Source: Octopus bimaculoides (taxonomy: Eukaryota). Taken from it: 64,000 bases of DNA. The notes under the pieces were generated by a model. That model saw only the letters and a list, made by a program, of their open reading frames with translations, searched no databases and had not been told where the DNA came from. Where the stretch lies: positions 2,265,457 through 2,329,456 of the forward strand of contig NC_068997.1 in assembly GCF_001194135.2 (NCBI RefSeq). The letters run 5' to 3'. This document shows, piece after piece, positions 7,562 through 36,764 of this stretch. Both the position numbers and the translations under genes were made by a program. Numbering within the stretch: the stretch's first letter is position 1; each line of letters opens with the position of its first letter.

Positions 7562-7764
7562 CTGCAAGAGATAAAAAGGAAGGACTTGAAACAAAACCAG
7601 AAATATTTGGCACAGAAATATGTGAAAGAATATGTAAACCGTATCGCTTGATTACACCCAGCTCCTTTCTTGCCCATTCCACTGACAGAGTAACAGCTCT
7701 AATAATATATACACAAACATGTTACATACATAATAATACATTAAGTATATGCACAGACATTATA

Positions 7765-8654
7765 TACATACATTAAAAAGTTCCTGGACTAGCTATGCTT
7801 AATGAAAATTAACTTATTTACCTCAGTTTTAACATGGGTCTCCTTCAAAACAGACACCTTGCACAGCAACACACCGGCCCCAGGATTCCTGCCACTTTTG
7901 GAATCTGGCCTGGAAGTCATTTCCTGTAAGCGAGTCGAGGACCACCTGTGACCTTTGAGCTGCATTTTTATTTTGGGGAAGAGATGGAACTCTGCAGGTG
8001 CTAATCTGGCAAATAGGGTGGGTGTGGAAGTGATACCATGTTGATTTTGGTAAAAAACTCATGAGTGAGGAGAGTTCAGTGACAGGGTTCATTGTCACTA
8101 TGAAGAATCCAATTCTTTGTGCTCCACAGATCCTGTCACTTCCACCGAATGCCCTCCCTCGAGTGCTTCAAAACTTTGCAGCAGAACACTTGATTGATGA
8201 TCTGGCCCTGGGAGATGAATTCTCAATGCAGAATACTGCAGATGTTGAAAAAAATGAAGAACATGCTTGATTGAGCAGCAGCTCTGTTGTGCCTTCTTCA
8301 GTAGTGGAGATGAAGGCCCTTTCCATTGTGACAACTGCTGCTTCATCTCATGGCTGTAACCCATAGACCCAACTCATCGCAGGTGGTGATCCTTGACATG
8401 AAGGATGGGTCATCAGTGGCATGCTGATAAAAATCTCGACAGACTTCGATGTGATGTCCATGACAAAACTGCAGACTACAACATACATGTGATCACAAAA
8501 ACACAAATTTTACAACTTGTGAAGTAAGCACAGCAATGTTACTTGGCACACTGCCTCATGAAGACGACTGCTAGCTTTCACTGCACACTCAACCATGTGC
8601 TGCCATCTGTTGGTGTGCTACAGAACTAGTCTGGAACTTTTTGCTACCACCTCA
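7765..8654 (-). mobile_element. Decayed mariner (DD34D-type) transposon
   Basis: TIR-like AAAAAGTTCCTGGACTAG / CTAGTCTGGAACTTTTT; C-terminal remnant NDFQARFQKWQESWGRCVAVQGVCFEGD; many stops. Confidence 0.8.
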
Positions 8655-8672
8655 TAAAACACATACATATTA

Positions 8673-9764
8673 CAGTGGCTCCTGCTTTATAAATCCACTG
8701 ATGATAAATCCACCTGCTTAATGTATCCAAAATGGATTGGGACAGAATTTTTATACATAAAATCTCTTGCCTAATACATCCAGACCATCGCTTAATAAAT
8801 CTAATTGTAGCTACTCCTTGCTAAAATTTCAACAAGCGACAGTGAATAAATGAAGTGCTTTTTTTTTTCACTTTTAAATACTGAGGGGTAGACTCCAGCA
8901 GTGCAAAATAGATCAATAAATATGTAGCAACTGGCAGTGGCTGCAGGAGTCTACTGCACAACCCTGTCATTCAAGCAAAAAAAGTAGGCTTCGAGATACC
9001 TCTTGTCAAAATTACATTCCCTTCTCATTCATTGGATGATGGTGTGTACCATGTGACTGTTGGTTGGTTGTGGCTGCTAGAGCTTACCTGTCAGTATTTA
9101 AGGGCAAATGGAAGCTTGGAAGAAGGTCTCTAGTCAGGCAATCAAACACTGTTGGACCAAAGCAAGTTTTGTTTCGGCTGAAGAATCAAATGAAGCCATA
9201 GATGTTAACAAAGATTTGATCCTGGCTTCACTGCCAACTGGATCGACTAAAAAGAAATTCAAGAACTGGTTGTCCATAGATGATGGTGCTGTTGTTGCCC
9301 CAGAGATCATCACTGAAGAAAACAAACTAGACGTGATCATTCATGACATTCGGTAATCTGAGAAGGAATCCAAAGGAGATGAAGCTGGTGATTCCGATGT
9401 TGATGTTGATGAAAGAGTTCCAGAGTCTGCAACACCAGCTGAAATGAGACACTCTCTAATTTGGTTAGAAAGTGGCCTTGAAAGTTTTGATTTCAGTGAC
9501 AGGAATCTTTTTAGAACTCTAAAGGAAAAAATCAATGCAGAGTTGCGAACAAAGTGTCCAGCAGAGCAAACAACACTCGACAAATTTTTCATTCAGTGAC
9601 ATTGTTTACAATGTTTTTATTCATGTATTTGCGTAGGTTTGTATTTTAATAAATACACATGTTTAATCAATTGACGAATTTTGTTCCTTCTGTTAAAAAA
9701 ATCCCTCATTTAATAAATCCAAAATAGGCAGTCCCAAGATGGATTTATAAAGTGGGGTCTATTG
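8673..9764 (+). mobile_element. Decayed pogo/Tigger-like DNA transposon
   Basis: TIRs CAGTGGCTCCTGCTTTATAAATCC / GGATTTATAAAGTGGGGTCTATTG; remnant AWKKVSSQAIKHCWTKASF followed by an acidic tail, typical of Tigger/CENP-B transposases. Confidence 0.75.
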
Positions 9765-11129
9765 TGTATACCTTTTATCGTTTCCTTGTTTCAGACATTA
9801 GACTGCAGCCATGCTGGGGCACAGCCTTGAAGAATTGACCCTAGTACTTACCATTTTAAGTCCAGTACTTATTCTGTATGTCCCTTTTGCCAAACTGCTA
9901 AGATGAGGGGATGTAAACACAAACACACACACACACATGATGGTCGTCTTATATTTTCCATCTACCAAGTCTACTCACAAGGCTTTGGTCAACCTGAGAC
10001 TATTGTAGAAGATACATGCCTAAGGTGCGATGCAGTGGGACTGAACCTAGAACCATGTGGTTGAGAAGCAAACTTCTTACCACACAGCCACGCCTGCACA
10101 GCTATGCCTGCGCTTATGCAATAATACAGTTTGTAGCAAGTTGGTAGAAGAGAGAATCTGTAAATTGATGCAGAACAAATATCTCAAGGGACCACATTTG
10201 CAAATGATTACAGTTACAGTTTGCAAACCAATATCCATTGATATACAAAACCAGAAGCACACATGAATTACATCCACACACATTCCAAAATGTAAGATAA
10301 ACAAACAAGCTTGTATTTTCAGTAAACTCATGTGTGTGTGAGTGTGTTTGTGTGTGTGTGTGTGTTTATGTATATACGTTTGTGTGTGTATCTTTTATCT
10401 TTTACTTGTTTCATTCGTTGGAGAGTGGCCATGCTGGGGCATTGCCTTGAAGGATAAATTCAAACAAATTGACCCCATCGTTTTGCTGAACCGTTAAGCT
10501 ATGTTGACATAAACAAACCAGTTGTCAAGTGGGGGTGGGGGACAAACACATATACAAAGACATCAGACACACACATACACACACACTACTAAGTTACAAT
10601 GAAATAAATAAACCAACACTGGTTGTCAAGCAGTGATGGGATGGGATAAATGCAGAAAGACACATAGATGTATATAGGTATCTATATGAGCTTCTTTCAG
10701 TTTCCACATACCAAATCCACTCACAAGCCTTTAGAAAGTGCCATGCAGTAGGACTGAACCTGGAACCATGTGATAAGGAAGCAAACTTCTTACCACACAG
10801 CCACGCCTGCACCTATAATACCAATTACATACTAGGGGTTTGTATAATAAAGAACCATTGAAATATTGGGGTTGATATAGTCAATTAGCTTCCCCCACCC
10901 CAAATTCCTGGTCTCTGCTCAGATTAAAATCTTTAGATTGAAGTGAAAGTATTCATTATTTCCACTCTTAATATTTAAAGAAAGAAAATTTTCAGGATAC
11001 ACTAAATTCCATTACAACTGGCATCAGATCAACCAGCCTCTTTAGAAGGAACCTGGGGTTATTATCTCCGGCAATAATGTTAACACATTACCAATCTTCT
11101 AAATTCTTCAACTGTCCACTCCATTAACC

Positions 11130-11400
11130 TTTATCGAAAGCAACAGAACCTGTTTAAAGAGAAACATGTTGTACATCGACAATCATCTCATAAATTCTTT
11201 GAACATTTCCCCGCAAGAGAAGCAGAACAACTTTAGCAAAACTACCAGGGAACTAACACTGCATGTGTAAATATGTGCTGTTGCCAACTGGAAATCTCTG
11301 AAGATTTTGAATCCAGAATGGAACGAGAAAGTTATTCCATTCTACTAGCACGACGACCATCAAAGGAATAGTATTTGTATCTGAGTTCAATTAAACTATA
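11130..11400 (+). mobile_element. Possible decayed coding fragment, tentatively the GIY-YIG C-terminus of a Penelope-like element
   Basis: A near-open frame, ...KEKHVVHRQSSHKFFEHF...EDFESRMERESYSILLARRPS, weakly resembles PLE endonuclease ends. Judged by eye only. Confidence 0.25.
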
Positions 11401-12222
11401 ATTACCACAAGCAACAGAGCTCTTCCAATATTTTCACAAGTTTTAACGTTCAAATTGGTATTTGGATGATTGTTGACAGAGAGAACAGACGAAAAAACAA
11501 TAATAATAATAATGATAATAATAATAATAATAAAAATAATAATCATAATAATAGTCGCAGGAGTGGCTGTGTACTAATTAGCTTGCATGCCAACCACATG
11601 GTTCCAGGTTCGGTCCCACTGCATGGCACCTTGAGCAAGTGCCTTCTACTATAGCCTCAGGCTGACCAAAGCCTTGTGAGTGGATTGGTAGAAGGAAACT
11701 GAAAGAAGCCTGTCNNNNNNNNNNNNNNNNNNNNNNNNNNNNNNNNNNNNNNNNNNNNNNNNNNNNNNNNNNNNNNNNNNNNNNNNNNNNNNNNNNNNNN
11801 NNNNNNNNNNNNNNNNNNNNNNNNNNNNNNNNNNNNNNNNNNNNNNNNNNNNNNNNNNNNNNNNNNNNNNNNNNNNNNNNNNNNNNNNNNNNNNNNNNNN
11901 NNNNNNNNNNNNNNNNNNNNNNNNNNNNNNNNNNNNNNNNNNNNNNNNNNNNNNNNNNNNNNNNNNNNNNNNNNNNNNNNNNNNNNNNNNNNNNNNNNNN
12001 NNNNNNNNNNNNNNNNNNNNNNNNNNNNNNNNNNNNNNNNNNNNNNNNNNNNNNNNNNNNNNNNNNNNNNNNNNNNNNNNNNNNNNNNNNNNNNNNNNNN
12101 NNNNNNNNNNNNNNNNNNNNNNNNNNNNNNNNNNNNNNNNNNNNNNNNNNATGGAATTATCCATACAATTTCAAAATAAGGTGATTAAAATCAAAATAAG
12201 CAACAAGGATATCCAAAGTTAA

Positions 12223-12310
12223 TGTAGTACGATCGTTTCATGTGACTCCATTTAATTAAGCAATGTGAACATTACATCAAATATAAAATGTAGAGCAATC
12301 TTCAGCTGCA
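12223..12310 (-). ncRNA. Type I hammerhead ribozyme motif with long stem II and palindromic stem III
   Basis: Minus strand reads TGCAG-CTGAAGA-(59 nt, partly paired, inner hairpin GTAATGT/ACATTGC)-GAA-ACGATCGT-A-CTACA. Stem I pairs 4 of 5. Confidence 0.7.
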
Positions 12311-12719
12311 CAAAGATATAGAAATTTAATGACATTACATTTCAACAGAAGGACATATTTTTATAACTACATTTAAACACTCCAAGTAGGAAGGAAGAAT
12401 ACAAAAAACCATTTTGACTTAGCCAGACCATACAGACTAGTAAATAATTCTAAGCAGATTTTTAACTGTCACTGATTGTATTTGTTTCTGGATCATCTTA
12501 TCAGACCTATTGATTCAAAGCTTAAGAGGGCATTACTTTTAAGGGGTAAACAGTATGGACAGTAAACATGGATGATATAGTTATAACATTTCTTTGGGTT
12601 TGGTGACAAACGACTATAGGTGAGGGGTTTCTATACTAGCAGACCAGTTTATAACGGAGAGGGGGAAGTATTAACATAAGGCACCTAGGTCAAAAGTATA
12701 TAAAATAAAGTTATATACT

Positions 12720-12995
12720 TCCTGGACCAGGCTGGGTGTTGTGCTCTTGAGCAAGACACTTTATTTCATGTTGCTTCAATTCACTCAGCTGCAGAACTGA
12801 GTTGCAACATCACTGGTTCCAATCTGTATTAGCTCTTGCCTTTCCTTTGGACAACATTGGTGGTGTGGAAAGGGGAGGCTGATATGTATGCGTGACTGCT
12901 GGTCTTCTATAAACAACCTTGACCCAATTTGTGCCTTGGAGGGTAACTTTCTAGGAGCAATCCAATGGTCATTCGTGACTGAATGGGGTCTTTAT
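12720..12995 (+). mobile_element. SINE family E, headless copy; homologous copy at 47405-47660
   Basis: CTTGAGCAAGACACTTTATTTC..CACTCAGCTGCAGAA..GACTGCTGGTCTT..GTCATTC(G/A)TGACTGA. Confidence 0.6.
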
Positions 12996-14294
12996 GTTTA
13001 AAAACATGTATATGTGTGTGTACCCTGACCATGCTGGAGCACCATAGACATTGTCTGTTGTTGTCCAACTAAATTACACTTCCTTTCACACCAAAATATT
13101 TATTCATGTTGAGAATATTAAAAGACTCAGATGATATAACAGGGTGGGAGCAGAGTGAGAGCAGGGTGGGTCCAGACACAAATACCAAAGAAATCAAAGA
13201 AACACAATCCACATAATGTTATTAATATTAGTAGAAATTCTATCAAAATGGTAACAAAAGAGGGAAACTATTCTCCTGCCTCTTGTATCAAAGCAGAAAT
13301 ATGTTTGATCGTATGGTGTCGGTGATAAGACAGAATATGACCCTATCATTATAGTAGAGGTCAGCAAACAGTTCCTGCTATTCTGCTATGTGTACAAGTA
13401 CACACAATCTTTCTGTGTGTCTGTCCATCTTTGTGACTCTGTTTCTCTCTCTAATTTCTTATTTTGGTGTCTAGTGGACACAAAAATATTTAAATATACA
13501 TTACCAATTTTATGTGTACAATTCATAAGATATCTATGTATACATACACACATACATAAGTTACACACAAACTTTCAGCTTTCATCTCACATTTCTATAT
13601 CAAGCGATGAAGTAGTTTTTGAATGAGAGGTCAACTAGAATTTCAGCCACAACATCTACAATTATTGTGACAAAGCAGCCTGCCTCGTAGAAGTTTCTAT
13701 TGCTAATTTTCAAAGGGTATAAATCTAACATGGGTGTATGAAGATTGTAGGGAGACCAGATACCAAAATCCCATCTCGGCCTCACACATGGGGCTCAACA
13801 GATCACATCAGTAGGTTCAGCACTATTTTGGTAAAGAGAGTTGCCAAAATAGCATAGAATCAAGCACCAGACTGTATTAGAAACTGCAGTATGGATGTAC
13901 TATAAAGTTAAGTCCTGGACATTTGTCTTGTGGAGCAGTGAAGCTGTGGAGAGTTGTAACTTTGGACAGAGGCCTGTTGCAGATATTGTGATCTGGAGCC
14001 AGCTGAACATGAACCATATATTTATTCTTTTACTTATTTCAGTTAGGACTATTTCTTTTAGAAATCAAGTTCTTATTTCCTCATTTGTTTTACCACTAAC
14101 AACAACAACAATAATTCTTTTTACTATAAGCACAAGGCACAACGACCCCAGTGCTCCACTGGTACTTATTTTATCGACTCCAAAATGATGAAAGGAGAAG
14201 TCGACTCAGCGGTTTTGAACTCAGAATGTAAAGACAGACAAAACGCCATTAAGCATTTTGCCTGGCCTGCTAACAATTCTGCCACCTTATTACC

Positions 14295-14336
<42 letters not shown>

Positions 14337-15242
14337 GATAATAATAATAATAATAAAGAATTTCAAGTTTTGGCACAGGGCCAGCAAATTCTGTGGAGGA
14401 GATAAGCTGATTACATAGACCCCAATGTTCATTTTATCGCCCCCGAAAGGATGAAAGGCAAGGCAAAGTTGACCCTGGTGGAATTTGAGCTCAGAACCTA
14501 AAAGACAGATGAAATACCGCATGTTACAATTCTGCCAGCTCAATAATGATAATAATAATAATAATGGAATCATTGCATACAGTGCTCAGCTACCCTACAA
14601 CCTAAGTTACAGAGCACAAAGGAAAAACAATCAGCACTAGTTGTTAAGCATTGGTTGTAAACATGAACACACATATACATGACAGGCTTTCGTACAATTA
14701 CCATCTACCAAATTCCACTTACAGGATGTAGGTCAACCCAAAGCTATACTAAGAAACATTTGCCCTAGACACCAAGCAGGGAGATTGAATTTGAAACTAT
14801 GAGGTTTAGAGACCAATATCTTAATCACATAACCATTCCTGCACCTATTACACACGCACACAGACGCACATTGCAATGTAAGAGCTGTAAGGTAGGTTGA
14901 TTTCAAATTTTGGCACAAGGCCAGCAATTTCGAGGAAAGGTGTATGTTAATTATGTCAACCTCAGCACTCACCTAGTACTTATTTTATCAGCCCTGAAAG
15001 AATGAAAGGCAAAGCTATCTTTGGTGGAGTTTGAACTCAGAATGTGAAGATGGACAAAATGCTGATAAGCATTTCACCCAACATGCTAACAATTCTGCCA
15101 GCTCACTGCCCCACAGTTGTAAAGTATATTGTTGTATATTTTACACAATACAAACATTATTTCATGTAGAACTCAGTACATTGATTAGGACGTATAGATG
15201 TATTTATGATATGAAAAGTTGGTTGTCCATTCTGATTTTTGC

Positions 15243-15451
15243 TTAATCCTTGAGCATTCAGATTAATTTATCAAATGTAATGCTTATTCATCCACATTTT
15301 TAAAAATTAATCATGTATTATCTTGTAGCTTTGAGATTTCAAAGATGTGATTGTTTGTTTTAAAAATATTATTGTAGGGTAGGTGTGAGAGGTTGGATCT
15401 GATCTCTTTGAACATAAAATAAGTAGAACAATTGGACCAGAAAAGGGTTAA
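15243..15451. mobile_element. piggyBac-like MITE, copy 1
   Basis: TTAA at both ends; TTAATCCTTGAGCATT ... AAAAGGGTTAA; homologous to 15656-15880. Confidence 0.6.
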
Positions 15452-15655
15452 GGCTTAGCTGTTCATATAAAACAGTTGAGATTTTTAATGTAAACAATTT
15501 TTATTATAAATGAGTCAGAGTTCATAATTAACATTTAGAGAAAGAAAAAGAACAGGGCTTCACATTTAAGGTACTTTAAACCATGTAAACGTTACTTACT
15601 GAGAAATAATGTTAGTTAACGAAAGAGCTATCTCTCTGTTACCAGTTCCTACCTG

Positions 15656-15880
15656 TTAATCCTTTAGCACTTGGATTACACTGCTGCATATAATGTTTAT
15701 TTATTCACATTGTTTTGAATTAATGATGCATTATCTCATATCTTCAAGAGGTCAATGATATTGACTGTTTTTAGAATGACATTGTAGGATAGGAGTAAGA
15801 GACTGGATCTGGCTACTTTGAATTTAAAACAGCAAGAATATTTGGGTGTGACATGGTTGGATTCAATGCTAAAAGGTTAA
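15656..15880. mobile_element. piggyBac-like MITE, copy 2
   Basis: TTAA-TCCTTTAGCA ... TGCTAAAAGG-TTAA. Confidence 0.65.
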
Positions 15881-17047
15881 ATGATTATCTGCTATTTAAT
15901 TCACAGATCATTCTCCACAGGTATGTTTCAAAGGTAATTCCTCTGGTCTCTTAGTGCTAACAGGCTAGGTGATGATGTTAATGTAAAATAATGTAGCTAA
16001 TTATGTCATTATCATTTGATATTTATCAATAATAATGAAGTCAAAAGATATAAGCTATATATAAATTAACAGTAAAGTTTATTTAATATTTTATAACGAG
16101 AAAATTGAGACAGATATTGGGCGATGCAGAGGGTGGGAAGTGTCTCCTGAATTGAGCTTATTTTTCTGTCTCTGCTTATAATACACACACATTCACACAC
16201 TGACAATGTACACTCACATGCTATGTGTGTATGTAGAAAGACTCTCCAACACGAATATGCCTCTGCATGAACATGTGCTCATAGAAAGGAAACTGTTACC
16301 ATATGTAAGTATATATGTCTATTGAGAGAGATGAGGATGTACCAACACACACACACACACACATATATAATCCATACAAAGATGTGTAAAGCCAATGCAT
16401 ATACTGCAACAACAACAACTGCACAGGTTGATGATAAAAGGAAGCCAGTAAAAGCAAGGACAACGTTCTGATGAAACGACAACAACAACTATGAAGAGGT
16501 GTTTATATTGATTAAAGTAAACAAACCTGGAGCAGATTGTCATCGCATTATGCAAACTATACGGATGACATGTAAATATAAACATCACTGCAACTGGTTC
16601 TGCAGATTGTATGCACATGTGCATCTCTCTATATACATATGTAGGCGTGTGTGTGTGTTTAGACATGTATTTCTTCAAGAAATACAAATATCGAAGAAAG
16701 GAAAAGTCAGTAATGCTGGCAGAGAGCTTCTTCAAATGCAGTCTCTGAATGCAAGACTTCCACTCCCATGTGGGCTTGTGCACCGACAGCAGACACTGCA
16801 CCGCCATCAACAGCTGACACAAAATTCTCCAGGCACAGATCCATGGTCTTTCGAGACCGACAGACGCCTACCTATCTATATGTATATACGTGTATGTGTG
16901 TGTGTGTGTGTGTGAGAGTATATACATTCATGTGTCTATACTTGCATGTTTGTGCTTGTACATACACACACACACATGTCTGGTGATGTGTGAGCACCTG
17001 GTGCACATCAGCATGAACATATATATGTGTGCGTGCAAATGCAGGTG

Positions 17048-17078
<31 letters not shown>

Positions 17079-18024
17079 ATATATATACATATACATAAAA
17101 ATATATATATATATACACCTGCATTTGCACACACACATATATATTATAGTCTATAAAGCTCAATTTAATTTTAATTTTTTATAAATTGATTTTAATTGAG
17201 ATTTTACCTGTAATTTTGAATTTTGTCCCTAATATTATTATACATATACATATATATATACATATACATATATATACATATACATATACACTTGTGCATA
17301 CATGGGTATATTCATGTGTGGGTGCACACATGCATATGGCAAGTGAACAGGTTGATGACCAATGTACCAGTCGGGTCATGGGATGGTACTGTTGGCTCCT
17401 AAAACGCTTTATTGTACCATTTTATATTGCCTGCTGCTATCTCTATGCTCTCCCTCCCCTCCTTAGACGGTCAAGTAAAACCAGCCATAATTCCCTTACT
17501 GACACCTGTCCAACCTGCAATTATGCTGGTTAGCTAACCTACCAACTTACCTCCTCCACCCCACCCCCCTCTGACATGTGCATCCAGTGTGCATGGATTT
17601 ATTTGCTACTTGTCTCTTGTTTATCAATTGTCTGATATGTTTGCTCCTACAGGTTGCATCTGTAATGTGACGAAATGCATTGCTGAATACTGAAACATAT
17701 GTAACAACTGGAATAAGTGATTACCAAGTTATACCCATGTGTTTTCCTTTCATATCTATATAGGTTTCATCTTTTATCTTTTACTTGTTACAGTCATTAG
17801 ACTGTGGCCACGCTGGGGCACTACCTTGGAGAATTTTAGTCGAATGAATCCACCCCAGTACTAATTTTTTTTTAAGTACTGGTTCTTATTCTATCAGTCC
17901 CTTTTTCCAAACCACTATGTTATAGGGATGTAAGCACACCATCATCGGTTGTCAAGTGATGGTAGGGGACAAGCACAAAGACACACACACATACACAAGC
18001 ACACGGCAAGCTTCTTTCAATTTC

Positions 18025-18255
18025 TTATTTCTTTACTGCCTACAAGGGGCTACACACAGAGGGGACACACAAGGACAGACAAAGGGATTAAGTCGATTAT
18101 ATCGACCCCAGTGTGTAACTGGTACTTATTTAATCGACCCCGAAAGGATGAAAGGCAAAGTCGACCTTGGCGGAATTTGAACTCAGAACGTAGCGGCAGA
18201 CGAAATATCGCTAAGCATTTCGCCCGACGTGCTAACCACTCTGCCAGCTCACGGC
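18025..18255 (-). mobile_element. tRNA-derived SINE family C (tail type 1) nested in a family B SINE
   Basis: A-box TGGCAGAGTGGTTAGC, B-box GAGTTCAAATTCC; 14-bp TSD CTTCTTTCAATTTC at 18011-18024 and 18256-18269. Confidence 0.85.
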
Positions 18256-19736
18256 CTTCTTTCAATTTCTTTCAATTTCTGTCTACTAAATCCACTCACA
18301 AGGCTTTGGTTGGCCCAAGGCTATAGAAGACACTTGCCCAAGGTGTCATTCAGTGGGACTGAACCTGGGACCATGAGGTTGGGAAGCAAGTATGAGAGTA
18401 AAGAAATGGGTTGGAAAATCCATAAGAATTCAAAGGGCCAGAAGGCTATATCTTCCTTCAATGATTCATATTTTAGCATTGTTTCTATGGCTGAATGCCT
18501 TTCCTAATACCAAGCACTTTGCCGAATGTACTGGGGGCATTTTTCATGGCACCAGCACTATAGCATTTACTTTGCCATCAGCACAGCTAAAGAGTCCACT
18601 GTCTACTGTAGTTGTGCACAGGCATTATTGGAATCATTTGCCAACCATTTGCAAAGTGTTAAAAACAAACAAAAAACAAATGTATCACAGGTCGTTCTCA
18701 AGCCATACAAAGGCAGAATTATGTGGTGTATATATTCCCCGCTCCCACCGGACAGGGACAGTTTTTGTAGAACCAGCACTTCCAGTGTCACTTGGTCGTT
18801 TGCAGAATGAAGGAGAGCACCTGTGATGGATGGGACAGACTAACTCTGAGAGGATCTTAATGGAGAAAATAACAGAAGGAGTAGTGTTGGGGTGGGAATA
18901 ATGAAGACAGATGGGGGGAGGGGGTGGAAGAGTAAATGCCAGGGAATTGTGTGAAGAAGAGGGGGGAAGAGACAGGGTGATAAAGGCAATGACTCAGGTT
19001 GAGTAGGTGGGTCCAATGTTGGGTGGGATCAGTCTTTCTGATGTGCCAGCATGGGTAGGTTGGACTGTTATTATTGAAGCTAAACAGGTTTATTGCTGAG
19101 AAAGGGTAGGGGCACTGCTAGTGAAGGGGGGTAACAGGAGAGAAATTGAGCATCAGAGAGTTAGTGAGAGAGAATTAGAGAGAGAGAGAGAGCAAGATTA
19201 AAATTTAAAATACACTCTGGAATTGTCAAAAACAAGCGTTAAAATAAATAAAATAATGATGAATAATACACACATACATGATGAACAGCATGAATAATAA
19301 TTACAATAATATCAAATGTTTTGGTACATAACTTTTGGCCCATGCTGTATATACATACATACACACACACATACACATATAATGCACCAACTGCACACAT
19401 GCACACGGACGAAGGTAGTAACCTGTAAATATACACACCCACTGGTGCAACAATCTCTGTATACACACACAGGCACACATATAGCTTAGCATATTCATAC
19501 CCAATCAGCTACATAAATTCTGTATGCACATTCACACTGATGCACTTGGCTATGCATTTATACATACATCAATGCACCAAGTTCTGTACATACTCAGTGC
19601 ACCAAACACAGTATACATACCAGGTTGAGGAAAAAGTTTGTGTGCTGGGTTAACATAATGATCTTCTATGCAAGAATTTATTCAAAAACAACAACAACTA
19701 TTCTTCAAAACACAGCACGCACATACATATATATGT

Positions 19737-19771
<35 letters not shown>

Positions 19772-20019
19772 CACATATATATACGTAAATATATATGCGT
19801 GAATATACACTAAAATTAGTGCAGCTAGCGCTAAATATGCACATACTACAATCAATGCACCTAACTCACACAACTCTTTCTCTCCCCCCTGTGAGTAATA
19901 TATAGANNNNNNNNNNNNNNNNNNNNNNNNNNNNNNNNNNNNNNNNNNNNNNNNNNNNNNNNNNNNNNNNNNNNNNNNNNNNNNNNNNNNNNNNNNNNNN
20001 NNNNNNNNNNNNNNNNNNN

Positions 20020-20050
<31 letters not shown>

Positions 20051-21102
20051 TGTTTGTATATGTATATATATATATAGATATATATATATATATGTTTGTA
20101 TATGTATATGTATATGTATACACACATACACAGACAATATCTATTGCTTTCTATATACGTACATATACACAAACACCCATGAACTCCCTGCCCCTTCTCT
20201 CAATATGCATGTGTGTGTACATATATATGTAAACATATATATATATATATATATATAAATGTGCATATGTAGAATTCATGCAGAGTGCATCTAATTGCAC
20301 ATAAACACAATTAGATATATCAATAAGCATTGTGCTGCACACATGCATTAGTGCAGCTAGCTCTGAATATAAACATATAGATATGAAAGAGCTCCAAGTG
20401 GTGTGTGTAAACACACACATACACACATATATATGCAATAGTAAATCTCATTCTTAAAATATGCATATACAAACACATACCAGGCACAATTTAAAAGGCA
20501 GCTGCACACATGCAAACGCACACAGATGTGCCACTAGGCAATTTATGTGCAAACATACTGACGTGAAACTAGACATCTGCACACAAAATTGGAAATTTCT
20601 GAAGATAAAAAGAAAATTGTAAGAGTTCACAGCAATGCACCTTGCAGTAAATGTGCAAACAGGTACATAAATGCACACAACGCCACTGCACCTGTGGCTG
20701 CCTCTACTGCACAGACACACACACACAGAAGCAAACATACATATACAGACACATGCACACGCACAAATATATTAACTTGGCTGCACATTTGTGCACTTAG
20801 CTGTGTATATACACACCTTTAAGCACACAGCAATATACACATGCAATTACATGGGCATAGAAATCTACATACATAATAGACCCTAGAAATTATGTGTGCG
20901 TATGTGTGTGTGTGTGTGTGTGCAGGAGAGACCGTCGCAGGTGCAGTGGCACACACACACGTATATATGTATGTATGTATGCATGTATATATGTGTATAT
21001 ACATACAGGTGGAGTGGTATATATATATATGTATATGTGTGCATATATTTTAGATATGTATGTATATGTGTGCATGTATATATATATATGTATGTGCATA
21101 TA

Positions 21103-21185
<83 letters not shown>

Positions 21186-21575
21186 TCCGAGCTCTGAATA
21201 TAAACACATACATGAGTGCTTCAAGTGGTGTGTATAAACGCACATACAAACATATGTGTGAATGTACGTGTGTGTGTATGTTGTGTGTGCGTGCGTGTGT
21301 GTGTGTGTGTGTGTGCATGCTGGGGTCTATTTGTTCAGCTAAACCTTTCAAGGCAGTGCTCCAGCATGGCTGTAGTCCAAGTAAAAGATAAAAGACCTAT
21401 GTATGTGCCGTCATCATTATCCCTTAATAGTCAGTTTCCAGGTTTGCATGCACCCCACCTCCCCACTATACATATATATATATGCCATTGCCTAGAAAGA
21501 AGCGTGACGTGCCTTTGATCCTTCTCACCCATGCTGGTGTCACAAGAAAATAGTAAAGCCTGCACAGAGTCCATC

Positions 21576-21607
<32 letters not shown>

Positions 21608-21921
21608 AACAAAGGGTTCATCTAGAGAGTAGGAACGTAGCTTTCAGTTTAGTCTTGTGAATAGCACAACTATTCTAGCCATCAAACCATCATAAAACAC
21701 TCTCTCAGTAATCTCATTAGTGGGGTTGGTGTGAGGAAGGACATCCAGCCATAGAAGCTGTATCAAAACAGAACACATGAGATGTAGTCTTCCAAGCAAC
21801 ATAGGAAAGTTGCTACTCTGAGTGGGTGTGTCCTACTTCTAGCTAGCAGTAAAAGCAGATCTAAAACGATATTGATGGTGGCTTGCATAGGAATAAGAGT
21901 GAGTTCGTGTGTGTGTGTGTG

Positions 21922-22139
21922 TAGGGTGGCCCAAAAGTAGGTTTACAGTTATTCAACTATCTCTTTCGCATTCATATATTAACAGTTTAGATCTTAATTA
22001 TATTAAAAAAAAAATACGAAACCATTATTCTATGCTAATTTAGATGATTGTAAGATAGAAATTTAAATGTAATAAAATGTTTTAGCGGAAATTTAAAGTG
22101 CCTACGTGATAACTGTAAACCTACTTTTGGGCCACCCTG
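21922..22139. mobile_element. Tc1/mariner-type MITE (218 bp)
   Basis: Perfect 30-bp TIR AGGGTGGCCCAAAAGTAGGTTTACAGTTAT; TA at the right flank; AT-rich non-coding core. Confidence 0.85.
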
Positions 22140-22578
22140 TATATATATACATACATATATATATGTATATATATATATATTCATACATACACACATATAC
22201 ATATNNNNNNNNNNNNNNNNNNNNNNNNNNNNNNNNNNNNNNNNNNNNNNNNNNNNNNNNNNNNNNNNNNNNNNNNNNNNNNNNNNNNNNNNNNNNNNNN
22301 NNNNNNNNNNNNNNNNNNNNNNNNNNNNNNNNNNNNNNNNNNNNNNNNNNNNNNNNNNNNNNNNNNNNNNNNNNNNNNNNTCATCATCATCATCATCATC
22401 GTTTAACGTCCGCTTTCCATGCTAGCATGGGTTGGACGATTTGACTGAGGACTGGTGAACCAGATGGCTACACCAGGCTCCAATCTGATTTGGCAGAGTT
22501 TCTACAGCTGGATGCCCTTCCTAACACCAACCACTCCGAGAGCTTAGTGGGTGCTTTTATGTGCCACCAGCACATACG

Positions 22579-22616
<38 letters not shown>

Positions 22617-25600
22617 CATATATATACATATATATATATATATTCTTTTATTCTTTTAGTTGTTTGAGTCATTTGACTGTGGCCATGCTGGAACACCACC
22701 TTTTAGTTGAGAAAACCGACCCCGGGACTTATTCTTTGTAAGCCTAGTACTTATTCTATCAGTATCTTTTTGCCGAACTGCTAAGTTACAGAGAAGTAAA
22801 TGCACCAGCATTGCATGTCAAGCGATGTTGAGGGGAAAAACACAGACACACACACATATATATATATACGACAGGCTTCTTTCAGTTTCCGTCTACCAAA
22901 TCCACTCACAAGGCTTTGTTGGCCTGAGGCTATAGTAGAAGATACTTATATGTGTGTGCGTGTGTGTGTGTGCGTGTCCGTGTATATTTATATATCTTTT
23001 ATCGTCTACTTGTTTCAGTCATGAGTCTGTGGCCATGCTGGGGCATTGTTTTGAAGGAATTTTAGCTAAATGTATTGGCCCCAGGACTGGTTTTTCCTTT
23101 CTTTTGTAAGCCTGGTACTTATTCTATTATTCTATTTTGCTGAACCACAAGGTTATGAGCACATAAACACACTGACACTGGTTTTCAAGTGGTGGTGGTG
23201 GTGGTGGTGGTGGTCGGTAAAAACATAGATGCAAAGACACATAAACACAAATATATATATATATATATAATGATAATAATAGTAATCCTTTTTACTATAA
23301 GCACTAGGCCTGAAATTTCTTTTGGTGAGGTGGGGGTACAGTTGATTAGACCGACCCCGGTATGAAACTAGTACTTAATTTATTGACCCCGAAAAGACGA
23401 AAGCAAAGTCGACCTCAACGGAATGTGAACTCAGAATGCAAAGACGAACAAAATGCCGCTAAGCATTTCAGCCAGCTTGCCGTCATGGTGATAATAATAA
23501 TAATGATAATAATAATAATAATGATAATAATATTAATAATGATAATAATAGATAAAGGAAAAGGAAAATAGATTTAGCACCAGTGCTAAATCTATTTTCT
23601 GTTTCCTTTATCAATTATTGTCTCAACTAACACTGCAGAATTCCTGATGTAGACCCAGCAGAAATATATCCCAACCTCGGTTGACACCAAGTAACCCAAA
23701 CTGTGAACATGTTTTACTCAACATACCAATTGACATATCCCCATTAATCATTCAAAATCACACATATATATATATATACTCTTCTACTCTAAGCAAAATT
23801 TTTGGGGAGGAGGCCAGTCAATTAGACCAACCCCAGTACACAACTGGTTCTTAATTTATCGACTCCGAAAAGATGAAAGATAAAGATCACCTCGGCAGAA
23901 TTTGAACTCAGAACATCAAGAAAGAGACAAAATACTGCTAAGCATTTCATCTGGCTTGCTAACGTTTCTGCCAGCTTGTCCCCTTTATATAAATATATAT
24001 ATGTATGTATTTATAGATCTATACCAAAATTTGGAAAAAAATATTGTATCTGTTATCAACGTAGCAAAATTCTCACATGTGAGTTTTTGTATGTATATCA
24101 ATTTAAATAAGAGCTAAAAGATGATCCATTGTAAAGACTTTCATCTTTTAGCTCTTATTTAAATTGATATATATATNNNNNNNNNNNNNNNNNNNNNNNN
24201 NNNNNNNNNNNNNNNNNNNNNNNNNNNNNNNNNNNNNNNNNNNNNNNNNNNNNNNNNNNNNNNNNNNNNNNNNNNNNNNNNNNNNNNNNNNNNNNNNNNN
24301 NNNNNNNNNNNNNNNNNNNNNNNNNNNNNNNNNNNNNNNNNNNNNNNNNNNNNNNNNNNNNNNNNNNNNNNNNNNNNNNNNNNNNNNNNNNNNNNNNNNN
24401 NNNNNNNNNNNNNNNNNNNNNNNNNNNNNNNNNNNNNNNNNNNNNNNNNNNNNNNNNNNNNNNNNNNNNNNNNNNNNNNNNNNNNNNNNNNNNNNNNNNN
24501 NNNNNNNNNNNNNNNNNNNNNNNNNNNNNNNNNNNNNNNNNNNNNNNNNNNNNNNNNNNNNNNNNNNNNNNNNNNNNNNNNNNNNNNNNNNNNNNNNTAT
24601 ATATATCATCATCACTCTCGGAGTGGTTGGCATTAGGAAGGGCATCCAGCTGTAGAAACTCTGCCAAATCAGACTGGAGCCTGGTGTTGCCATCCGGTTT
24701 CACCAGTCCTCAGTCAAATCGTCCAACCCATGCTAGCATGGAAAGCGGACGTTAAACGATGATGATGATGATGATGATCATCATCATCATCATCGTTTAA
24801 CATCCGCTTTCCATGCTAGCATGGGTGGATGATTTGATTGAGGACTGTTGAGGCAAGTAAAATCAAAATCGAATCAAATTCGATGACTGACACCAGTGCC
24901 AGTAGAGTGCTAAGAGCACCGTCCAAGCATGATCGTTGCCAGACCAGCTGACTGGCTTCCGTGCCGGTGGCCCTTAAGAAGCACCATTCGAGCAAGGTCG
25001 TTATAAGTGTCACCTTACTGGCACTTATACTGGTGGCACATGAAAAAAACATTCGAGCGAGGTCGTTGCCAGTGCCGATGGACAGGCTCCTGTGCAGGTA
25101 GCACGTAAAATACACCATTTTGAGCATGGCTGTTGCCAGTACTGCCTGACTGGCCCTCATGCCAGTGGCACGTAAAAGCACCCACTACACTCTCAGAGTG
25201 GTTGGCATTAGGAAGGGCATCCAGCTGTAGAAACTCTGCCAAATCAGATTGGAGCCTGGTGTAGCCATCTGGTTCGCCAGTCCTCAGCTGTAGAAAATCT
25301 GCCTCAATAAACTACAGCTGATCCATGTAAGCATGGAACAGTAATTAAAATAATAATGATGATGAGAATGATGATATATAATAGAGAGTAGTTGCCATAT
25401 TTCATTCCAGATCAGCTATCTCTGATGATCACAAGGTGACATAATTATATTGTTACCGAACATCCCGTTTAATCCCGAGCACAAAACAGATTGGTAAGGT
25501 TGGCCATAATGGATATTGTACACTTTCAATAATATACCCACTCTATTGACAGATATACGAGCGCATTTTTTTCCTGACTTATGGACTTTTAGACCACACA

Positions 25601-26377
25601 CACACACATATATTCATAAATATATACACACACCTGCTATATATTAAGTGATCCACACCAAGCAGTGAGACACTGTGCTAAAACAGAGCCTTCCAACCAT
25701 GCCATTATGGAGAGCAAACATGACAGAATTAGTGGTGATGATGATGATGATGAAAATGACAATGGTGATGGTGATGATGATGATGATGATGATAAACAAT
25801 AAACTACTTTTGATTCTTCCCCGCCCCTTTTATTAAATTTTTGTAGTAGTTTTTATTGATTCTTTTTTCATAAACTTTACTTTGCGGTTGTTGATTTTCT
25901 AGTCAGTGTTGTTGTTATTGTTATTGCTGTTATTGTTTTCACTGGTGGTGTTGTTGTTGTTGTTGTTGTTACCTTGACATTCTGCTGCTGTTACGTTGTA
26001 GAAAGGTGAGACTATGGCATATAGCATTGATCGGCAACACACAGGAGGCTGTAGTATCTATGCGTGTGATGCACGTGTGTTTGTGATCATATGTATACAC
26101 AAGTGTGTGTATATATGTTTGTGCAATCGTGTCATTGTGTATGTGAGTAAGTATATGTGTTAGTGTGTATTTGTGCGAGGGAGACTGTAATGTGTGTGAT
26201 TGTGTATGTGCCTTCACGTCATTGTATAGATGTTACGTTTGAGTCAATGAATAAGTGTGTGTGTGCGTGTGATTACCAATTTGCCAGTTTCTGTGTTCAA
26301 CACTGGAATAAAGTTCTCCAATATACCTGCTGACACCATGGTGATGATGATGATGAGGAAACTGCGAGTACCATCAC

Positions 26378-26421
<44 letters not shown>

Positions 26422-29320: not shown

Positions 29321-29358
<38 letters not shown>

Positions 29359-29778
29359 ATTGTGAGAGAGAGAGGGAGAGGAGAGAGAGAGAGGGAGAGG
29401 GGGGAGAGAGAGGGAGATGTATGTGTGTATTCATATATATGTGTGTGCATGCATGTATGTATATATGTTATTTATACATACATACACTTATCTGTATACC
29501 TGTGTATATAGAGAACATACAAGATTTCATCATGTATATGTTGTGTGTGTGTGTGTGTGTGTGTGTTATACATATACTCACATATTTGCATGCGTAAGTG
29601 TATGGAAAATTTGTTGTTGGTTTTTTGGTTTTGCTTTTTTTTTATATTTTCAAAAAACTGAAAATCTATAAGTTTTAGTATATTTTTTTCAGTAAAGAAA
29701 GTCAGTTATCGATCTGGAATTATCTGTGACAGAATCTCACCTGTAAACCTGTAAAAGGTAAAACTGAGTATTGGTGTG

Positions 29779-29846
<68 letters not shown>

Positions 29847-29929
29847 TGCATAGGTGGGGGTGGGGAAGTGTCTGGAAGTAGTGAATGAGTAAACATTTTG
29901 TTCTGGCACTGGACCAATACTGTATCTAC

Positions 29930-30545
29930 TACAAGCATCATTACCACCACCACCACCATGACCACTACCACCACCACCACTACTTCCATCACCATTGCCT
30001 ACCATACATCAACTGTCACCACCACTGCCACTATTCCTTCGAATACTACCACTGTTGCTACCTGTATCACCAACACTTACAACAGTTACTACAAGTACGA
30101 CATCAAATACTACCACTACAACTATTACTTCTACTGCCACCAACACTAGCATCCTACCATCATCGTTATACCCCTATTACACCTACTACACCCACCCCTA
30201 TTGCAGCTCCCACCATCCACCCCTATTACCAACACAGTCAGCACCACTACCACCGCCCATGTCAATACTGCCATGACTACCACCACCACTATCACTACTG
30301 GCATAACAACTACTACAACCGCTACCACAACAACCACTACCACCACATCTACTACTCCTACCACTACTACTACAACAACAAACACTACCACGAATACCTC
30401 AATCACTATCACTACCACTACATCTATTACTACTACTACCACCACCACCACAACTACTACTACTCCCACCTCCACCACCACCACTACTGTTACCAACCCT
30501 GCCACCACATATACTCCACACACCCCACTACTCACCGTCACCTAT
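29930..30545. repeat. Cryptic (ACC/ACT/ACA)n trinucleotide low-complexity tract
   Basis: Gives Thr-, His- and Val-rich pseudo-ORFs in all frames; similar tracts at 46750-47000, 61915-62110 and 62420-62560. Confidence 0.85.
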
Positions 30546-30862
30546 CATTAATAAATGTAAAGACTATGCAAAAATGAACCTGAGACTGCAAAGTCAGATT
30601 TCAGTGAAACCAGAAGCCAGTTCTTCCCGAGTCTGCTGAATTGGTGAAAGCAGCATCAATGGAAGTCTGGCACTGAGAACTTTATTAAAAGCCATCTTGA
30701 AGAAAATCTAGGAATTCTAAACAAGTGACATGGCAGTTTACCATTTCAATGATAACACAGAAAATGTATTTAATATTATTAACTGGAAGACTGCCAGACA
30801 CATACATTCATAATCACACATGTGTACATGCATACACACACACACACACACACACACATACA

Positions 30863-30905
<43 letters not shown>

Positions 30906-36693: not shown

Positions 36694-36764
<71 letters not shown>

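What the first reader, a model, noticed from the sequence alone, without database searches (positions are those of the whole stretch)
12223..12310. Minus-strand hammerhead, sense to the myosin pre-mRNA, with an 8-bp palindromic stem III
Seen in sequence: TGCAG-CTGAAGA-59 nt-GAA-ACGATCGT-A-CTACA. The ACGATCGT palindrome suits a double-hammerhead dimer. It lies in the 31.5-kb intron on the transcribed strand, so cleavage would cut nascent myosin RNA (inference). Stem II is partly decayed, so this copy may be inactive.
Basis: partly seen in the sequence, partly recalled or inferred. Interest (0 to 1): 0.72.

Follow-up and report, generated by a model that had tools for sequence, protein, structure and literature searches.

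The report
Lone hammerhead-like motif in myosin intron
A short stretch in a huge intron of a mollusc myosin-I gene has nearly all the hallmarks of a self-cutting "hammerhead" RNA and is probably a stray, inactive copy left by a mobile element, which is a known and fairly ordinary kind of thing in invertebrate genomes.

Summary
The letters are exactly as described (minus strand, 12310-12223). They lie on the sense strand of a 31,530-nt intron of a class-I myosin gene.

**What fits a hammerhead**
- The core is perfect: CUGAAGA...GAA.
- Helix III is an 8-nt palindrome closed by A15.1-U16.1, that is 2 bp plus a GAUC tetraloop, giving a GUA cleavage triplet.
- Helix I pairs at 5 of 6 positions.
- Helix II is weak but not absent. 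It starts flush with the core (U.U, U-A, G-C), then has a 3-nt bulge and a long imperfect hairpin. Active natural hammerheads with a U.U base or a 2-bp stem II are documented.
- Chance predicts about 0.001-0.01 such motifs per 64-kb window. The window holds two more hammerhead-like motifs (31.1 kb, 44.5 kb), so 3 are observed against 0.13 expected.

I therefore think it is a genuine hammerhead-type motif rather than chance (about 0.6 against 0.27).

**What does not fit**
- Rfam gives no hit.
- The window holds no second copy, tandem repeat, retroelement ORF or matching-palindrome partner.
- The hammerhead fold lies 9 kcal/mol above the MFE.
- No family could be retrieved with these tools.

Best reading: a solitary hammerhead relic, probably retroelement-derived, that is inert or feeble. 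An effect on myosin mRNA is unlikely. This is a known kind of element and of modest interest.

The parts
12306..12310 (-). Helix I, 5' strand (UGCAG; positions 2.5-2.1). The pairing register continues upstream to 12314.
   Evidence: It pairs with 12227-12223 as G-C, A-U, C x A, G-C, U-A, then G.U. That is 5 of 6 positions, or 7 of 9 if extended.
12299..12305 (-). Hammerhead core box C3-A9 (CUGAAGA, N7 = A)
   Evidence: It is an exact match to CUGANGA. There are 47 such boxes in the window on both strands.
12240..12298 (-). The 59-nt 'helix II' segment. Flush with the core it forms U10.1.U11.1, U-A and G-C, then a 3-nt bulge, a 5-bp helix and a distal imperfect hairpin.
   Evidence: The MFE hairpin is -9.9 kcal/mol with z = -1.34 and is offset 2 x 5 nt from the core. 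The core-flush conformer is -6.6 kcal/mol.
12237..12239 (-). Core G12 A13 A14 (GAA)
12229..12236 (-). Helix III, the palindrome ACGAUCGU. As a monomer it forms A15.1-U16.1 and C-G closing a GAUC tetraloop. Between two copies it forms an 8-bp duplex. It holds 2 of the 4 CpGs in 12151-12750.
   Evidence: Cofolding two copies forms the intermolecular 8-bp helix.
12228..12228 (-). H17 (A). The cleavage triplet is GUA and the predicted scissile bond is 12228/12227.
12223..12227 (-). Helix I, 3' strand (CUACA; positions 1.1-1.5)
7562..39091 (-). Host intron of the class-I myosin gene, 31,530 nt. It lies between the exon ...SNPVLE and the exon AFGNAKTARNDNSSRF.
   Evidence: The Elysia marginata ortholog has the same exon structure with a 1.2-kb intron.
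11715..12150 (.). Assembly gap (436 N) 73 nt downstream of the motif on the transcribed strand. A SINE copy (11590-11714, + strand) runs into its other side. Sequence hidden here cannot be assessed.

Best explanation
This is a solitary sequence with the architecture of a type I hammerhead ribozyme of the invertebrate and amphibian style. It has a perfect core, a short helix III with a palindromic tetraloop, an open helix I and a weak helix II. It most likely arrived with a hammerhead-carrying retroelement, either a Penelope-like element or a retrozyme-type repeat. It now sits as a passenger, in sense orientation, in the 31.5-kb intron of a myosin-I gene.

As it stands it is inert or at most feebly self-cleaving:
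- Helix II begins with a U.U mismatch and only two pairs before a bulge.
- The hammerhead fold competes poorly with other folds.
- No second copy is present to build the double hammerhead.
- Even at the rate of comparable natural monomers, it would cut under about 2% of transcripts before the downstream splice site is made.

Shown: the sequence features, the context, and the statistical excess. Inferred: the retroelement origin and the inactivity.
For: **Architecture.** Every invariant position is present.
- The U.U at the base of helix II matches the axolotl HHR_Amex2 family (PMC7229834).
- Natural active hammerheads with 2-bp stem II and U10.1-U11.1 are documented (PMC3088659).

**Statistics for the loose descriptor** (GAA, A-palindrome, H, helix I at 4 of 5 or better).
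- The window gives 3 hits against 0.126 expected from 539 permuted-core decoys (P = 3e-4).
- It gives 3 of 24 GAA-preceded sites against 1 of 1066 slid control sites.
- None of 1500 Markov-3 windows reach 3 hits.

**Statistics with a literature-based helix II rule.**
- The candidate and the 44.5-kb motif both pass, so 2 are observed against 0.007-0.016 expected.

**Control for the descriptor.** In 86 kb of other invertebrate contigs it finds two motifs with excellent helix II (L003 z = -3.0, L004 z = -4.9).

**Solo copies are normal.** Most min-hammerheads are single, scattered and highly variable (PMC4209133). About 44% of Xenopus retrozymes are intronic (10.64898/2026.07.22.740005).

**Inactivity.**
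- Hammerhead topology is -3.6 kcal/mol against an MFE of -12.8. The constrained fold is -7.4 against -14.4.
- There is no partner or tandem copy.
- The HHR_Amex2 monomer cleaves only 22% in one hour (PMC7229834).
Against: - No Rfam hammerhead model matches, even at E <= 10 on 151 nt. Rfam also misses the well-formed control motif in L003, so this weighs little.
- No retroelement context. There is no RT or GIY-YIG signal in the three sense frames for about 4 kb on either side. There is no tandem repeat and no other copy of the flanks in 64 kb.
- No 'halo' of decayed relatives. Cores with exactly one mismatch give 1 hit against 2.6 expected by chance.
- The 59-nt helix II segment folds no better than shuffles (z = -1.34). 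Its core-flush pairing costs 3.3 kcal/mol.
- I chose the descriptors post hoc.
- The family test, a genome-wide search, could not be run.
Confidence: 0.6

Rival explanations
1. Chance look-alike. This is ordinary AT-rich intron sequence in which a CUGAAGA box, a GAAA and an 8-nt palindrome happen to lie in hammerhead order. No ribozyme ancestry is involved.
For: - At about 0.01 per 64 kb, a 2-3 Gb genome would hold several hundred such patterns by chance, and still some tens with the helix II rule.
- Helix II is not significant on its own.
- There is no Rfam hit, no family, no halo, no retroelement context and no tandem copy.
- The 47.7-kb motif shows how divergence inside a SINE can create a tidy hammerhead-like string by accident.
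Against: - Three motifs of this architecture in one window against 0.13 expected.
- Two of them have palindromes of 6 nt or more, against 0.022 expected (P = 2e-4).
- Helix I pairs at 4, 4, 4 and 3 of 5 positions at the four palindrome-bearing sites, against a background chance of 0.085 for 4 of 5 or better.
- The 44.5-kb motif passes a complete descriptor at a decoy rate of 0.004, so this genome very probably carries hammerheads.
Confidence: 0.27
2. Working intronic ribozyme. The motif self-cleaves, either as a monomer through its 2-bp helix III or as a dimer between two transcripts. That would cut nascent myosin-I pre-mRNA and lower or time its expression.
For: - The core is perfect and the GUA triplet is cleavable.
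- It is in sense orientation in the intron.
- U.U-based and 2-bp stem II hammerheads can be active (PMC3088659, PMC7229834).
- The CpG-containing palindrome is intact in a CpG-depleted region (o/e 0.32), and the lack of one-mismatch relatives would fit constraint.
- Conserved sense-strand intronic hammerheads exist in amniotes (PMC6155905).
Against: - The hammerhead fold is 9 kcal/mol above the MFE.
- There is no cis partner for the dimer.
- There are no recognisable loop-loop contacts and no Rfam hit.
- The orthologous intron of Elysia marginata (1.2 kb) has no such motif.
- With the 22%-per-hour rate of the closest natural monomer (PMC7229834) and about 1-2.5 min of transcription to the 3' splice site, under 2% of transcripts would be cut. 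This is an inference; the polymerase speed is from general knowledge.
- Cleavage inside an intron need not block splicing. That point is exon tethering (Dye, Gromak and Proudfoot 2006), cited from memory.
Confidence: 0.06
3. Edge of a tandem hammerhead repeat (retrozyme or satellite) whose other units are hidden in the 436-N assembly gap 73 nt downstream. A cis dimer partner would then exist.
For: - Assembly gaps often mark repeats.
- Metazoan type I hammerheads typically sit in 150-450-bp tandem repeats (PMC7229834).
- The gap starts 73 nt after the motif.
Against: - Nothing in 12151-13200 is repeated on the far side of the gap or upstream.
- The far side of the gap is a SINE copy running into it. 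SINE tails and the very abundant TA microsatellites explain the other gaps in the window.
Confidence: 0.05

Closest known systems
Type I hammerheads of metazoan non-LTR retrozymes and satellite DNA, especially axolotl HHR_Amex2 (PMC7229834) and the newt satellite 2 double hammerhead (Forster et al. 1988, cited in PMC4209133)
   Same: - Type I topology.
- Helix III of 2 bp capped by a tetraloop with a palindromic sequence.
- U.U mismatch at the base of helix II.
- Weak as a monomer and much better as a dimer through an extended helix III.
   Different: - Those lie in 330-350-bp tandem repeats in tens of thousands of copies.
- They have a short helix II and loop 1-loop 2 contacts.
- Here there is a single copy, no tandem repeat, a 59-nt bulged helix II and no recognisable tertiary contacts.
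Minimal hammerheads (min-HHR) of Penelope-like elements (PMC4209133)
   Same: - Perfect core, short helix I (4-5 bp) and a palindromic helix III region.
- Presumed dimeric action with low in vitro activity.
- Extreme sequence variability.
- Most copies are solitary and scattered through invertebrate genomes.
   Different: - min-HHRs have a strong helix II (6-8 bp), a highly conserved G10.1-C11.1 pair and one unpaired nucleotide after A9.
- The candidate has U.U, then 2 bp, then a bulge.
- No RT or GIY-YIG remnant lies within about 4 kb.
Conserved intronic hammerheads of amniotes (HH9/HH10 in RECK, CTCL, DTNB; PMC6155905)
   Same: A type I hammerhead on the sense strand of an intron of a host gene. 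It would cut the pre-mRNA if active.
   Different: - Those are ultraconserved, canonical and recognised by Rfam models.
- Here there is no Rfam match and no evidence of conservation.
'HHR_core' and 'HHR_half_core' strings in Naiad Penelope-like elements (PMC8557442)
   Same: CUGANGA and GAAA halves are present but do not fit stem/loop descriptors. In some cases they are separated by 35-50 nt.
   Different: - Those lie in the 3' UTR directly after the Naiad RT ORF, and no function is claimed for them.
- No such ORF is present here.
- The candidate additionally has helix I and a palindromic helix III.

Membership tests
Hammerhead ribozyme, type I | Core strand C3-A9 = CUGANGA | tested here: met
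   CUGAAGA at 12305-12299
Hammerhead ribozyme, type I | Core G12 A13 A14, followed by an A15.1-U16.1 pair and H17 (not G) at the cleavage site | tested here: met
   GAA at 12239-12237, A15.1 at 12236, U16.1 at 12229 and A17 at 12228. The triplet is GUA.
Hammerhead ribozyme, type I | Helix I formed by the 5' and 3' flanks (4-6 bp) | tested here: met
   G-C, A-U, C x A, G-C, U-A, G.U, which is 5 of 6 positions. The background chance of 4 of 5 or better is 0.085.
Hammerhead ribozyme, type I | Helix II stacked directly on the core, with a 10.1-11.1 pair (usually G-C) | tested here: inconclusive
   - The pairing is U.U, U-A, G-C, then a 3-nt bulge and 5 bp.
- U.U bases and 2-bp stems occur in active natural hammerheads (PMC3088659, PMC7229834).
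- However, the flush conformer is 3.3 kcal/mol less stable than the offset hairpin.
- The segment folds no better than shuffles (z = -1.34).
Hammerhead ribozyme, type I | The hammerhead secondary structure is the favoured fold | tested here: not met
   Hammerhead topology is -3.6 kcal/mol against an MFE of -12.8. The constrained fold is -7.4 against -14.4, and the whole-region z-score is +0.28. Nearest-neighbour energies ignore stabilisation from the core's tertiary structure.
Hammerhead ribozyme, type I | Match to the curated covariance models (Rfam Hammerhead_1/3/II, HH9, HH10) | tested here: not met
   No hammerhead hit at gathering score, nor at E <= 10 on 1.3 kb and on 151 nt. The same search also misses the well-formed motifs at 44.5 kb and in L003, so sensitivity for this style is poor.
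Hammerhead ribozyme, type I | Self-cleavage giving 2',3'-cyclic phosphate and 5'-OH ends | not testable with these tools
   This needs in vitro transcription or RNA-end mapping.
Metazoan dimeric type I hammerhead (retrozyme / satellite) | Short helix III (1-2 bp) with a 2-4-nt palindromic loop | tested here: met
   A-U and C-G closing GAUC, so the whole 8-mer is a palindrome. Cofolding two copies forms the 8-bp duplex.
Metazoan dimeric type I hammerhead (retrozyme / satellite) | Lies in tandem repeats of 150-450 bp, so a second copy is on the same RNA | tested here: not met
   No tandem or direct repeat in 10800-13600. No second GAAACGATCGTA at 2 mismatches or fewer in the 64 kb. The 436-N gap is untestable.
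Penelope-like-element min-HHR | Located in a pseudo-LTR next to an RT/GIY-YIG ORF, or belongs to a consensus family of many copies | tested here: not met
   Pfam finds no RT or EN in the sense frames of 12151-15970 and 7750-11714. There are no other copies in the window. Genome-wide family membership could not be tested.
Conserved intronic hammerhead (HH9/HH10-like) | Conserved in the orthologous intron of other species | tested here: inconclusive
   The only ortholog reached is Elysia marginata (L001). It has a 1.2-kb intron without the motif. It is too distant to align intron sequence.

The most novel reading that the evidence does not exclude
The motif belongs to an undescribed mollusc lineage of hammerheads with a long, bulged helix II. 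The 57-nt bipartite helix II motif found in contig L004 is a comparison point. On this reading the motif is catalytically competent, as a dimer or with host factors, and is retained in sense orientation because cutting the 31.5-kb intron tunes myosin-I transcript output, for example through premature termination.
Probability: 0.05. Interest if true: 0.65.

Novelty: new member of a known kind. Interest (0 to 1): 0.3.

Why it matters
If the main reading is right, it adds one more solitary hammerhead-type relic to the many already known in invertebrate genomes. It also hints that this mollusc genome carries hammerhead motifs at roughly one or more per 64 kb, and that Rfam models do not see them. 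That matters mostly for annotation: descriptor-based searches, not covariance models, are needed for this style.

It would matter biologically only if the copy cleaves. It would then be a non-amniote example of a sense-strand intronic hammerhead acting on a host pre-mRNA. The evidence here speaks against that.

Tried and rejected
1. **First working view: pure chance.** This rested on no Rfam hit, z = +0.28 and 'no helix II'. I revised it after three things. The decoy, slid-control and Markov statistics showed an excess. The literature showed that U.U-based and 2-bp stem II hammerheads are natural and active (PMC3088659, PMC7229834). Rfam also failed on a well-formed control motif.
2. **One repeat family for all four motifs.** Rejected, because the hammerhead-like sites share no flank similarity.
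3. **The 47.7-kb motif as the best-formed hammerhead (stems 4/3/3).** Rejected, because it lies in a diverged copy of an abundant SINE whose consensus lacks CUGANGA and GAAA.
4. **Retroelement context.** Pfam scans of the sense frames about 4 kb either side found nothing.
5. **Retrozyme-like tandem array.** There is none at 12 kb. The 89-nt array near the 31.1-kb motif does not contain the motif.
6. **Reaching more of the same genome.**
   - An exact look-up of a window ORF found nothing.
   - Contigs fetched through transposase homologs lack the window's SINE and flanks, so they come from other organisms.
   - Metagenome scans for a 24-mer of the candidate and a 32-mer of the SINE returned nothing.
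   - A literature search for the SINE sequence returned nothing.
7. **Organism.** I guessed octopus from my recollection of the SINE. The best hits to the myosin exons are gastropod proteins. I report only 'mollusc'.

Full report
**Observation**

- TGCAG, 12310-12306
- CTGAAGA, 12305-12299
- 59 nt, 12298-12240
- GAA, 12239-12237
- ACGATCGT, 12236-12229
- A, 12228
- CTACA, 12227-12223

The predicted scissile bond is 12228/12227.

The stated context also holds. Four exons of a class-I myosin lie on the minus strand:
- the P-loop exon, ending at about 59128
- EASK...SNPVLE, 39196-39092
- AFGNAKTARNDNSSRF, 7561-7514
- GKYMDIEF..., near 2988

The intron runs from donor GT 39091-39090 to acceptor AG 7563-7562, which is 31,530 nt. 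The best protein matches to the joined exons are gastropod myosin-I fragments: Elysia marginata 91% and Biomphalaria 92%. The organism is therefore a mollusc. The window is a draft assembly with eleven N runs. One of them (11715-12150) starts 73 nt downstream of the motif.

**Anatomy in hammerhead numbering**

- C3-A9 is CUGAAGA and G12-A14 is GAA.
- A15.1-U16.1 and C15.2-G16.2 close a GAUC tetraloop. The whole 8-mer is therefore a palindrome.
- H17 is A, so the triplet is GUA.
- Helix I is G-C, A-U, C x A, G-C, U-A, G.U.
- Helix II is the weak part. Read flush with the core it gives U10.1.U11.1, U-A and G-C, then a 3-nt bulge on the 3' strand, a 5-bp helix (C-G, U-A, C-G, U.G, A-U) and a distal imperfect hairpin.

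RNAfold prefers a register offset from the core by 2 x 5 unpaired nucleotides: -9.9 kcal/mol against -6.6 for the flush register. The 59-mer folds only slightly better than shuffles (z = -1.34). The full hammerhead topology scores -3.6 kcal/mol against an MFE of -12.8. A constrained fold of the 99-mer gives -7.4 against -14.4. The region as a whole has z = +0.28. Two copies cofold through the 8-bp palindrome, as any such palindrome would.

**Is it more than chance?**

I first thought not, and changed my mind on the numbers.

*The loose descriptor.* It requires CUGANGA, then 6-80 nt, then GAA followed by an A-started palindrome, then H, with helix I at 4 of 5 or better.
- The real core gives 3 hits in the window: 12.2 kb (8-nt palindrome), 31.1 kb (minus strand, ACCGGT) and 44.5 kb (plus strand, AUAU).
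- 539 decoy cores (permutations of the boxes, searched in the real sequence) give 0.0057 hits per box pair. That is 0.126 expected for the 22 real box pairs (P = 3e-4).
- For palindromes of 6 nt or more: 2 observed against 0.022.
- For palindromes of 8 nt or more: 1 observed against 0.009.

*Controls.*
- A control that keeps the local sequence uses A-positions in the same neighbourhoods that are not preceded by GAA. It gives 1 hit in 1066 sites, against 3 in 24.
- 1500 third-order Markov windows give means of 0.13 (any palindrome) and 0.012 (8 nt or more). None has three hits.

*With a helix II rule taken from the literature.* The rule accepts 3 or more flush pairs, or U.U plus 2 or more pairs, or one unpaired nucleotide plus 3 or more pairs.
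- The candidate and the 44.5-kb motif both pass.
- The expectation is 0.007-0.016 for any palindrome and 0.0007 for 8 nt or more.

*A test of the descriptor elsewhere.* In 86 kb of unrelated invertebrate contigs it finds two motifs with convincing helix II:
- L003, 6672-6709: 5-bp helix II with the typical unpaired U, z = -3.0, and a 12-nt palindrome.
- L004, 7087-7170: 57-nt bipartite helix II, z = -4.9, and a 10-nt palindrome.

*Caveats.* I framed the descriptors after seeing the candidate. The numbers are small. At about 0.01 per window, a genome of 2-3 Gb would still hold hundreds of chance instances of the loose pattern.

**What the literature says about the weak points**

- Metazoan type I hammerheads usually have helix III of 1-2 bp with a 2-4-nt palindromic loop and act as dimers when two copies are on one RNA (PMC4209133, PMC6155905).
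- Invertebrate ones typically have 2 bp plus a tetraloop.
- The axolotl HHR_Amex2 family (about 60,000 copies) combines that helix III with a U.U mismatch at the base of helix II. It cleaves 22% in one hour as a monomer and much better as a dimer (PMC7229834).
- Perreault et al. report natural active hammerheads whose stem II has only two pairs or starts with U10.1-U11.1. The U.U mismatch is the best tolerated of all mispairs at that position (PMC3088659).

Helix II therefore cannot be scored as failed, only as marginal.

**What speaks against a working or family-borne ribozyme**

- No Rfam hammerhead model matches at the gathering score, nor at E <= 10 on 1.3 kb or on 151 nt. Rfam equally misses the 44.5-kb motif and the L003 motif, so this is weak evidence.
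- The 600 nt around the motif have no other copy in the window. Neither half of the motif recurs with up to 3 mismatches.
- There is no tandem or direct repeat.
- No second site carries the same palindrome, so a cis double hammerhead is impossible unless a copy hides in an assembly gap.
- The hammerhead-like sites share no flank similarity.
- Pfam finds no reverse transcriptase or GIY-YIG endonuclease in the sense frames about 4 kb to either side.
- Cores with exactly one mismatch show no excess: 1 hit against 2.6 expected. There is thus no visible halo of decayed relatives.
- The orthologous intron in Elysia marginata is 1.2 kb and lacks the motif.
- The window is strongly CpG-depleted (o/e 0.32), and the palindrome carries 2 of the 4 CpGs in 600 nt. 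That argues against an old, neutrally decayed copy. It fits a young insertion, constraint, or chance.

**Weighing**

Two other motifs, independent of the candidate, are very unlikely to be chance:
- 44.5 kb passes a complete descriptor at a decoy rate of 0.004.
- 31.1 kb has a 6-nt palindrome and a 7-bp bulged helix II, flush on its 3' side.

This genome therefore probably carries hammerhead-type motifs at about one or more per window. Against a chance rate of 0.001-0.01 for the candidate's own pattern, ancestry from a hammerhead-bearing element is the more likely origin. My estimates are about 0.6 for that origin plus 0.05 for a gap-hidden tandem array, and 0.27 for chance.

Activity is a separate question. 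The arguments against it are the unfavourable fold, the missing partner and the absence of tertiary-contact features. Kinetics add to this. At the HHR_Amex2 monomer rate of about 0.004 per minute, and with 1-2.5 minutes for polymerase to cover the remaining 4.66 kb (my inference), under 2% of transcripts would be cut before the 3' splice site exists. In addition, intronic cleavage does not necessarily prevent splicing. That last point is from memory: Dye, Gromak and Proudfoot 2006. I put a functional role at about 0.06.

**Comparison and novelty**

The closest known things are:
- retrozyme and satellite type I hammerheads (HHR_Amex2 style)
- the minimal hammerheads of Penelope-like elements
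- the conserved intronic hammerheads of amniotes
- the unclassifiable 'HHR_core / half_core' strings of Naiad elements (PMC8557442)

The candidate works like the first two on paper. It fails their context criteria (tandem repeat, pseudo-LTR, consensus family) within the sequence available. If real, it is a new member of a known kind. Solitary hammerhead motifs in invertebrate genomes and in introns are already well documented (PMC4209133; 10.64898/2026.07.22.740005).

Noticed in passing
window 44548-44587 (+): This is the best complete hammerhead-like motif in the window: caaatgtc CUGAAGA a GGGGU-uaua-ACCCU GAA AUAU A gaaataca.
- Helix II has 5 bp after one unpaired nucleotide.
- Helix III is the minimal AUAU palindrome.
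- Helix I pairs at 4 of 5 positions.
- The decoy rate is 0.004 per window.
- It lies about 80 nt after a (TA)n tract and between 35-nt inverted repeats (44478-44512 / 44652-44686).
- It is antisense to the myosin gene.
- Rfam does not see it.
   Followed up: partly
window 31132-31076 (-): A third hammerhead-like motif, sense to the myosin gene and in the same intron: gcaug CUGAGGA ggg [UG-a-GGCUG uaaugu CAGUC-CA] GAA ACCGGU C cacgu.
- It has a 6-nt palindrome.
- Helix I pairs at 4 of 5 positions.
- Helix II has 7 bp with a bulge, is flush on its 3' side, and has 3 unpaired nucleotides after A9.
- Its palindrome cannot pair with the candidate's.
   Followed up: partly
window 47729-47774 (+): A tidy hammerhead-like string with stems of 4, 3 and 3 bp. 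It lies inside a diverged copy of the abundant SINE, and the SINE consensus has no CUGANGA or GAAA there. It is therefore an accident of divergence.
   Followed up: yes
L003 6664-6717 (+) and L004 7079-7178 (+), contigs of ENA assembly ERZ21867824: Two well-formed type I hammerhead motifs with long palindromic helix III (12 and 10 nt).
- L003 sits about 60 nt after a (TA)n/poly-T tract.
- L004 has a 57-nt bipartite helix II (z = -4.9).
- Neither is detected by Rfam.
- I used them only as a control for the descriptor.
   Followed up: partly
window 11590-11714 (+), 18275-18405 (-), 34350-34460 (-), 38240-38370 (-), 45930-46060 (-), 48140-48270 (-): An abundant SINE family with consensus ...GGTTCCGGGTTCAGTCCCACTGCATGGCACCTTGGGCAAGTGTCTTCTACTATAGCCTCAGGCCAACCAAAGCCTTGTGAGTGGATTTGGTAGACGG. 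From memory it resembles a very abundant Octopus SINE, but I did not test that. It was not found in the metagenome collection or in papers.
   Followed up: partly
window 12748-12992 and 47421-47654 (+): A second interspersed repeat family, about 72% identical between the two copies. One copy lies 440 nt from the candidate but does not include it.
   Followed up: partly
window 31240-31700: A tandem array with an 89-nt unit, 2.5 clear copies at 78% identity, and weaker copies around it. It lies just upstream of the 31.1-kb motif on the minus strand. Its units contain no hammerhead core.
   Followed up: partly
window 12306-12330 (-): The sequence directly before the core, uuucuauaucuuugugcag|CUGAAGA, looks like a strong 3' splice site on the myosin sense strand. 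Read in the phase of the preceding exon it would give a stop after 10 codons. In Drosophila virilis Penelope an intron ends at the 5' end of hammerhead helix I (PMC4209133), which is a loose parallel.
   Followed up: no
window-wide, e.g. 17019-17144, 24709-24841, 49199-49355: Hundreds of sub-threshold Rfam microRNA matches (mir-297, mir-466, mir-3149, MIR4374...) fall on TA and CA microsatellites on both strands. They are low-complexity artefacts.
   Followed up: yes
window 4292-4363 (-): A tRNA-like sequence scores 40.5 bits with the Rfam tRNA model, but ARAGORN does not call it. It may be a tRNA pseudogene or a SINE head.
   Followed up: partly
window 59488-59907 (-) and about 7800-9000 (-): Two transposase remnants lie in the myosin introns.
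- A Tc1-like DDE_3 ORF of 139 aa has relatives at 82% identity or less in ENA and JGI assemblies.
- A frame-shifted mariner-like remnant (...FHLFPKIKMQLKGHRW...) appears in the translation.
   Followed up: partly
L001 9971-10279 and 14237-18821: In Elysia marginata two myosin-I paralog segments lie side by side. One has the four exons fused with no introns. The other has the same exon structure as the window, but with introns of 1-2 kb instead of 20-31 kb.
   Followed up: no
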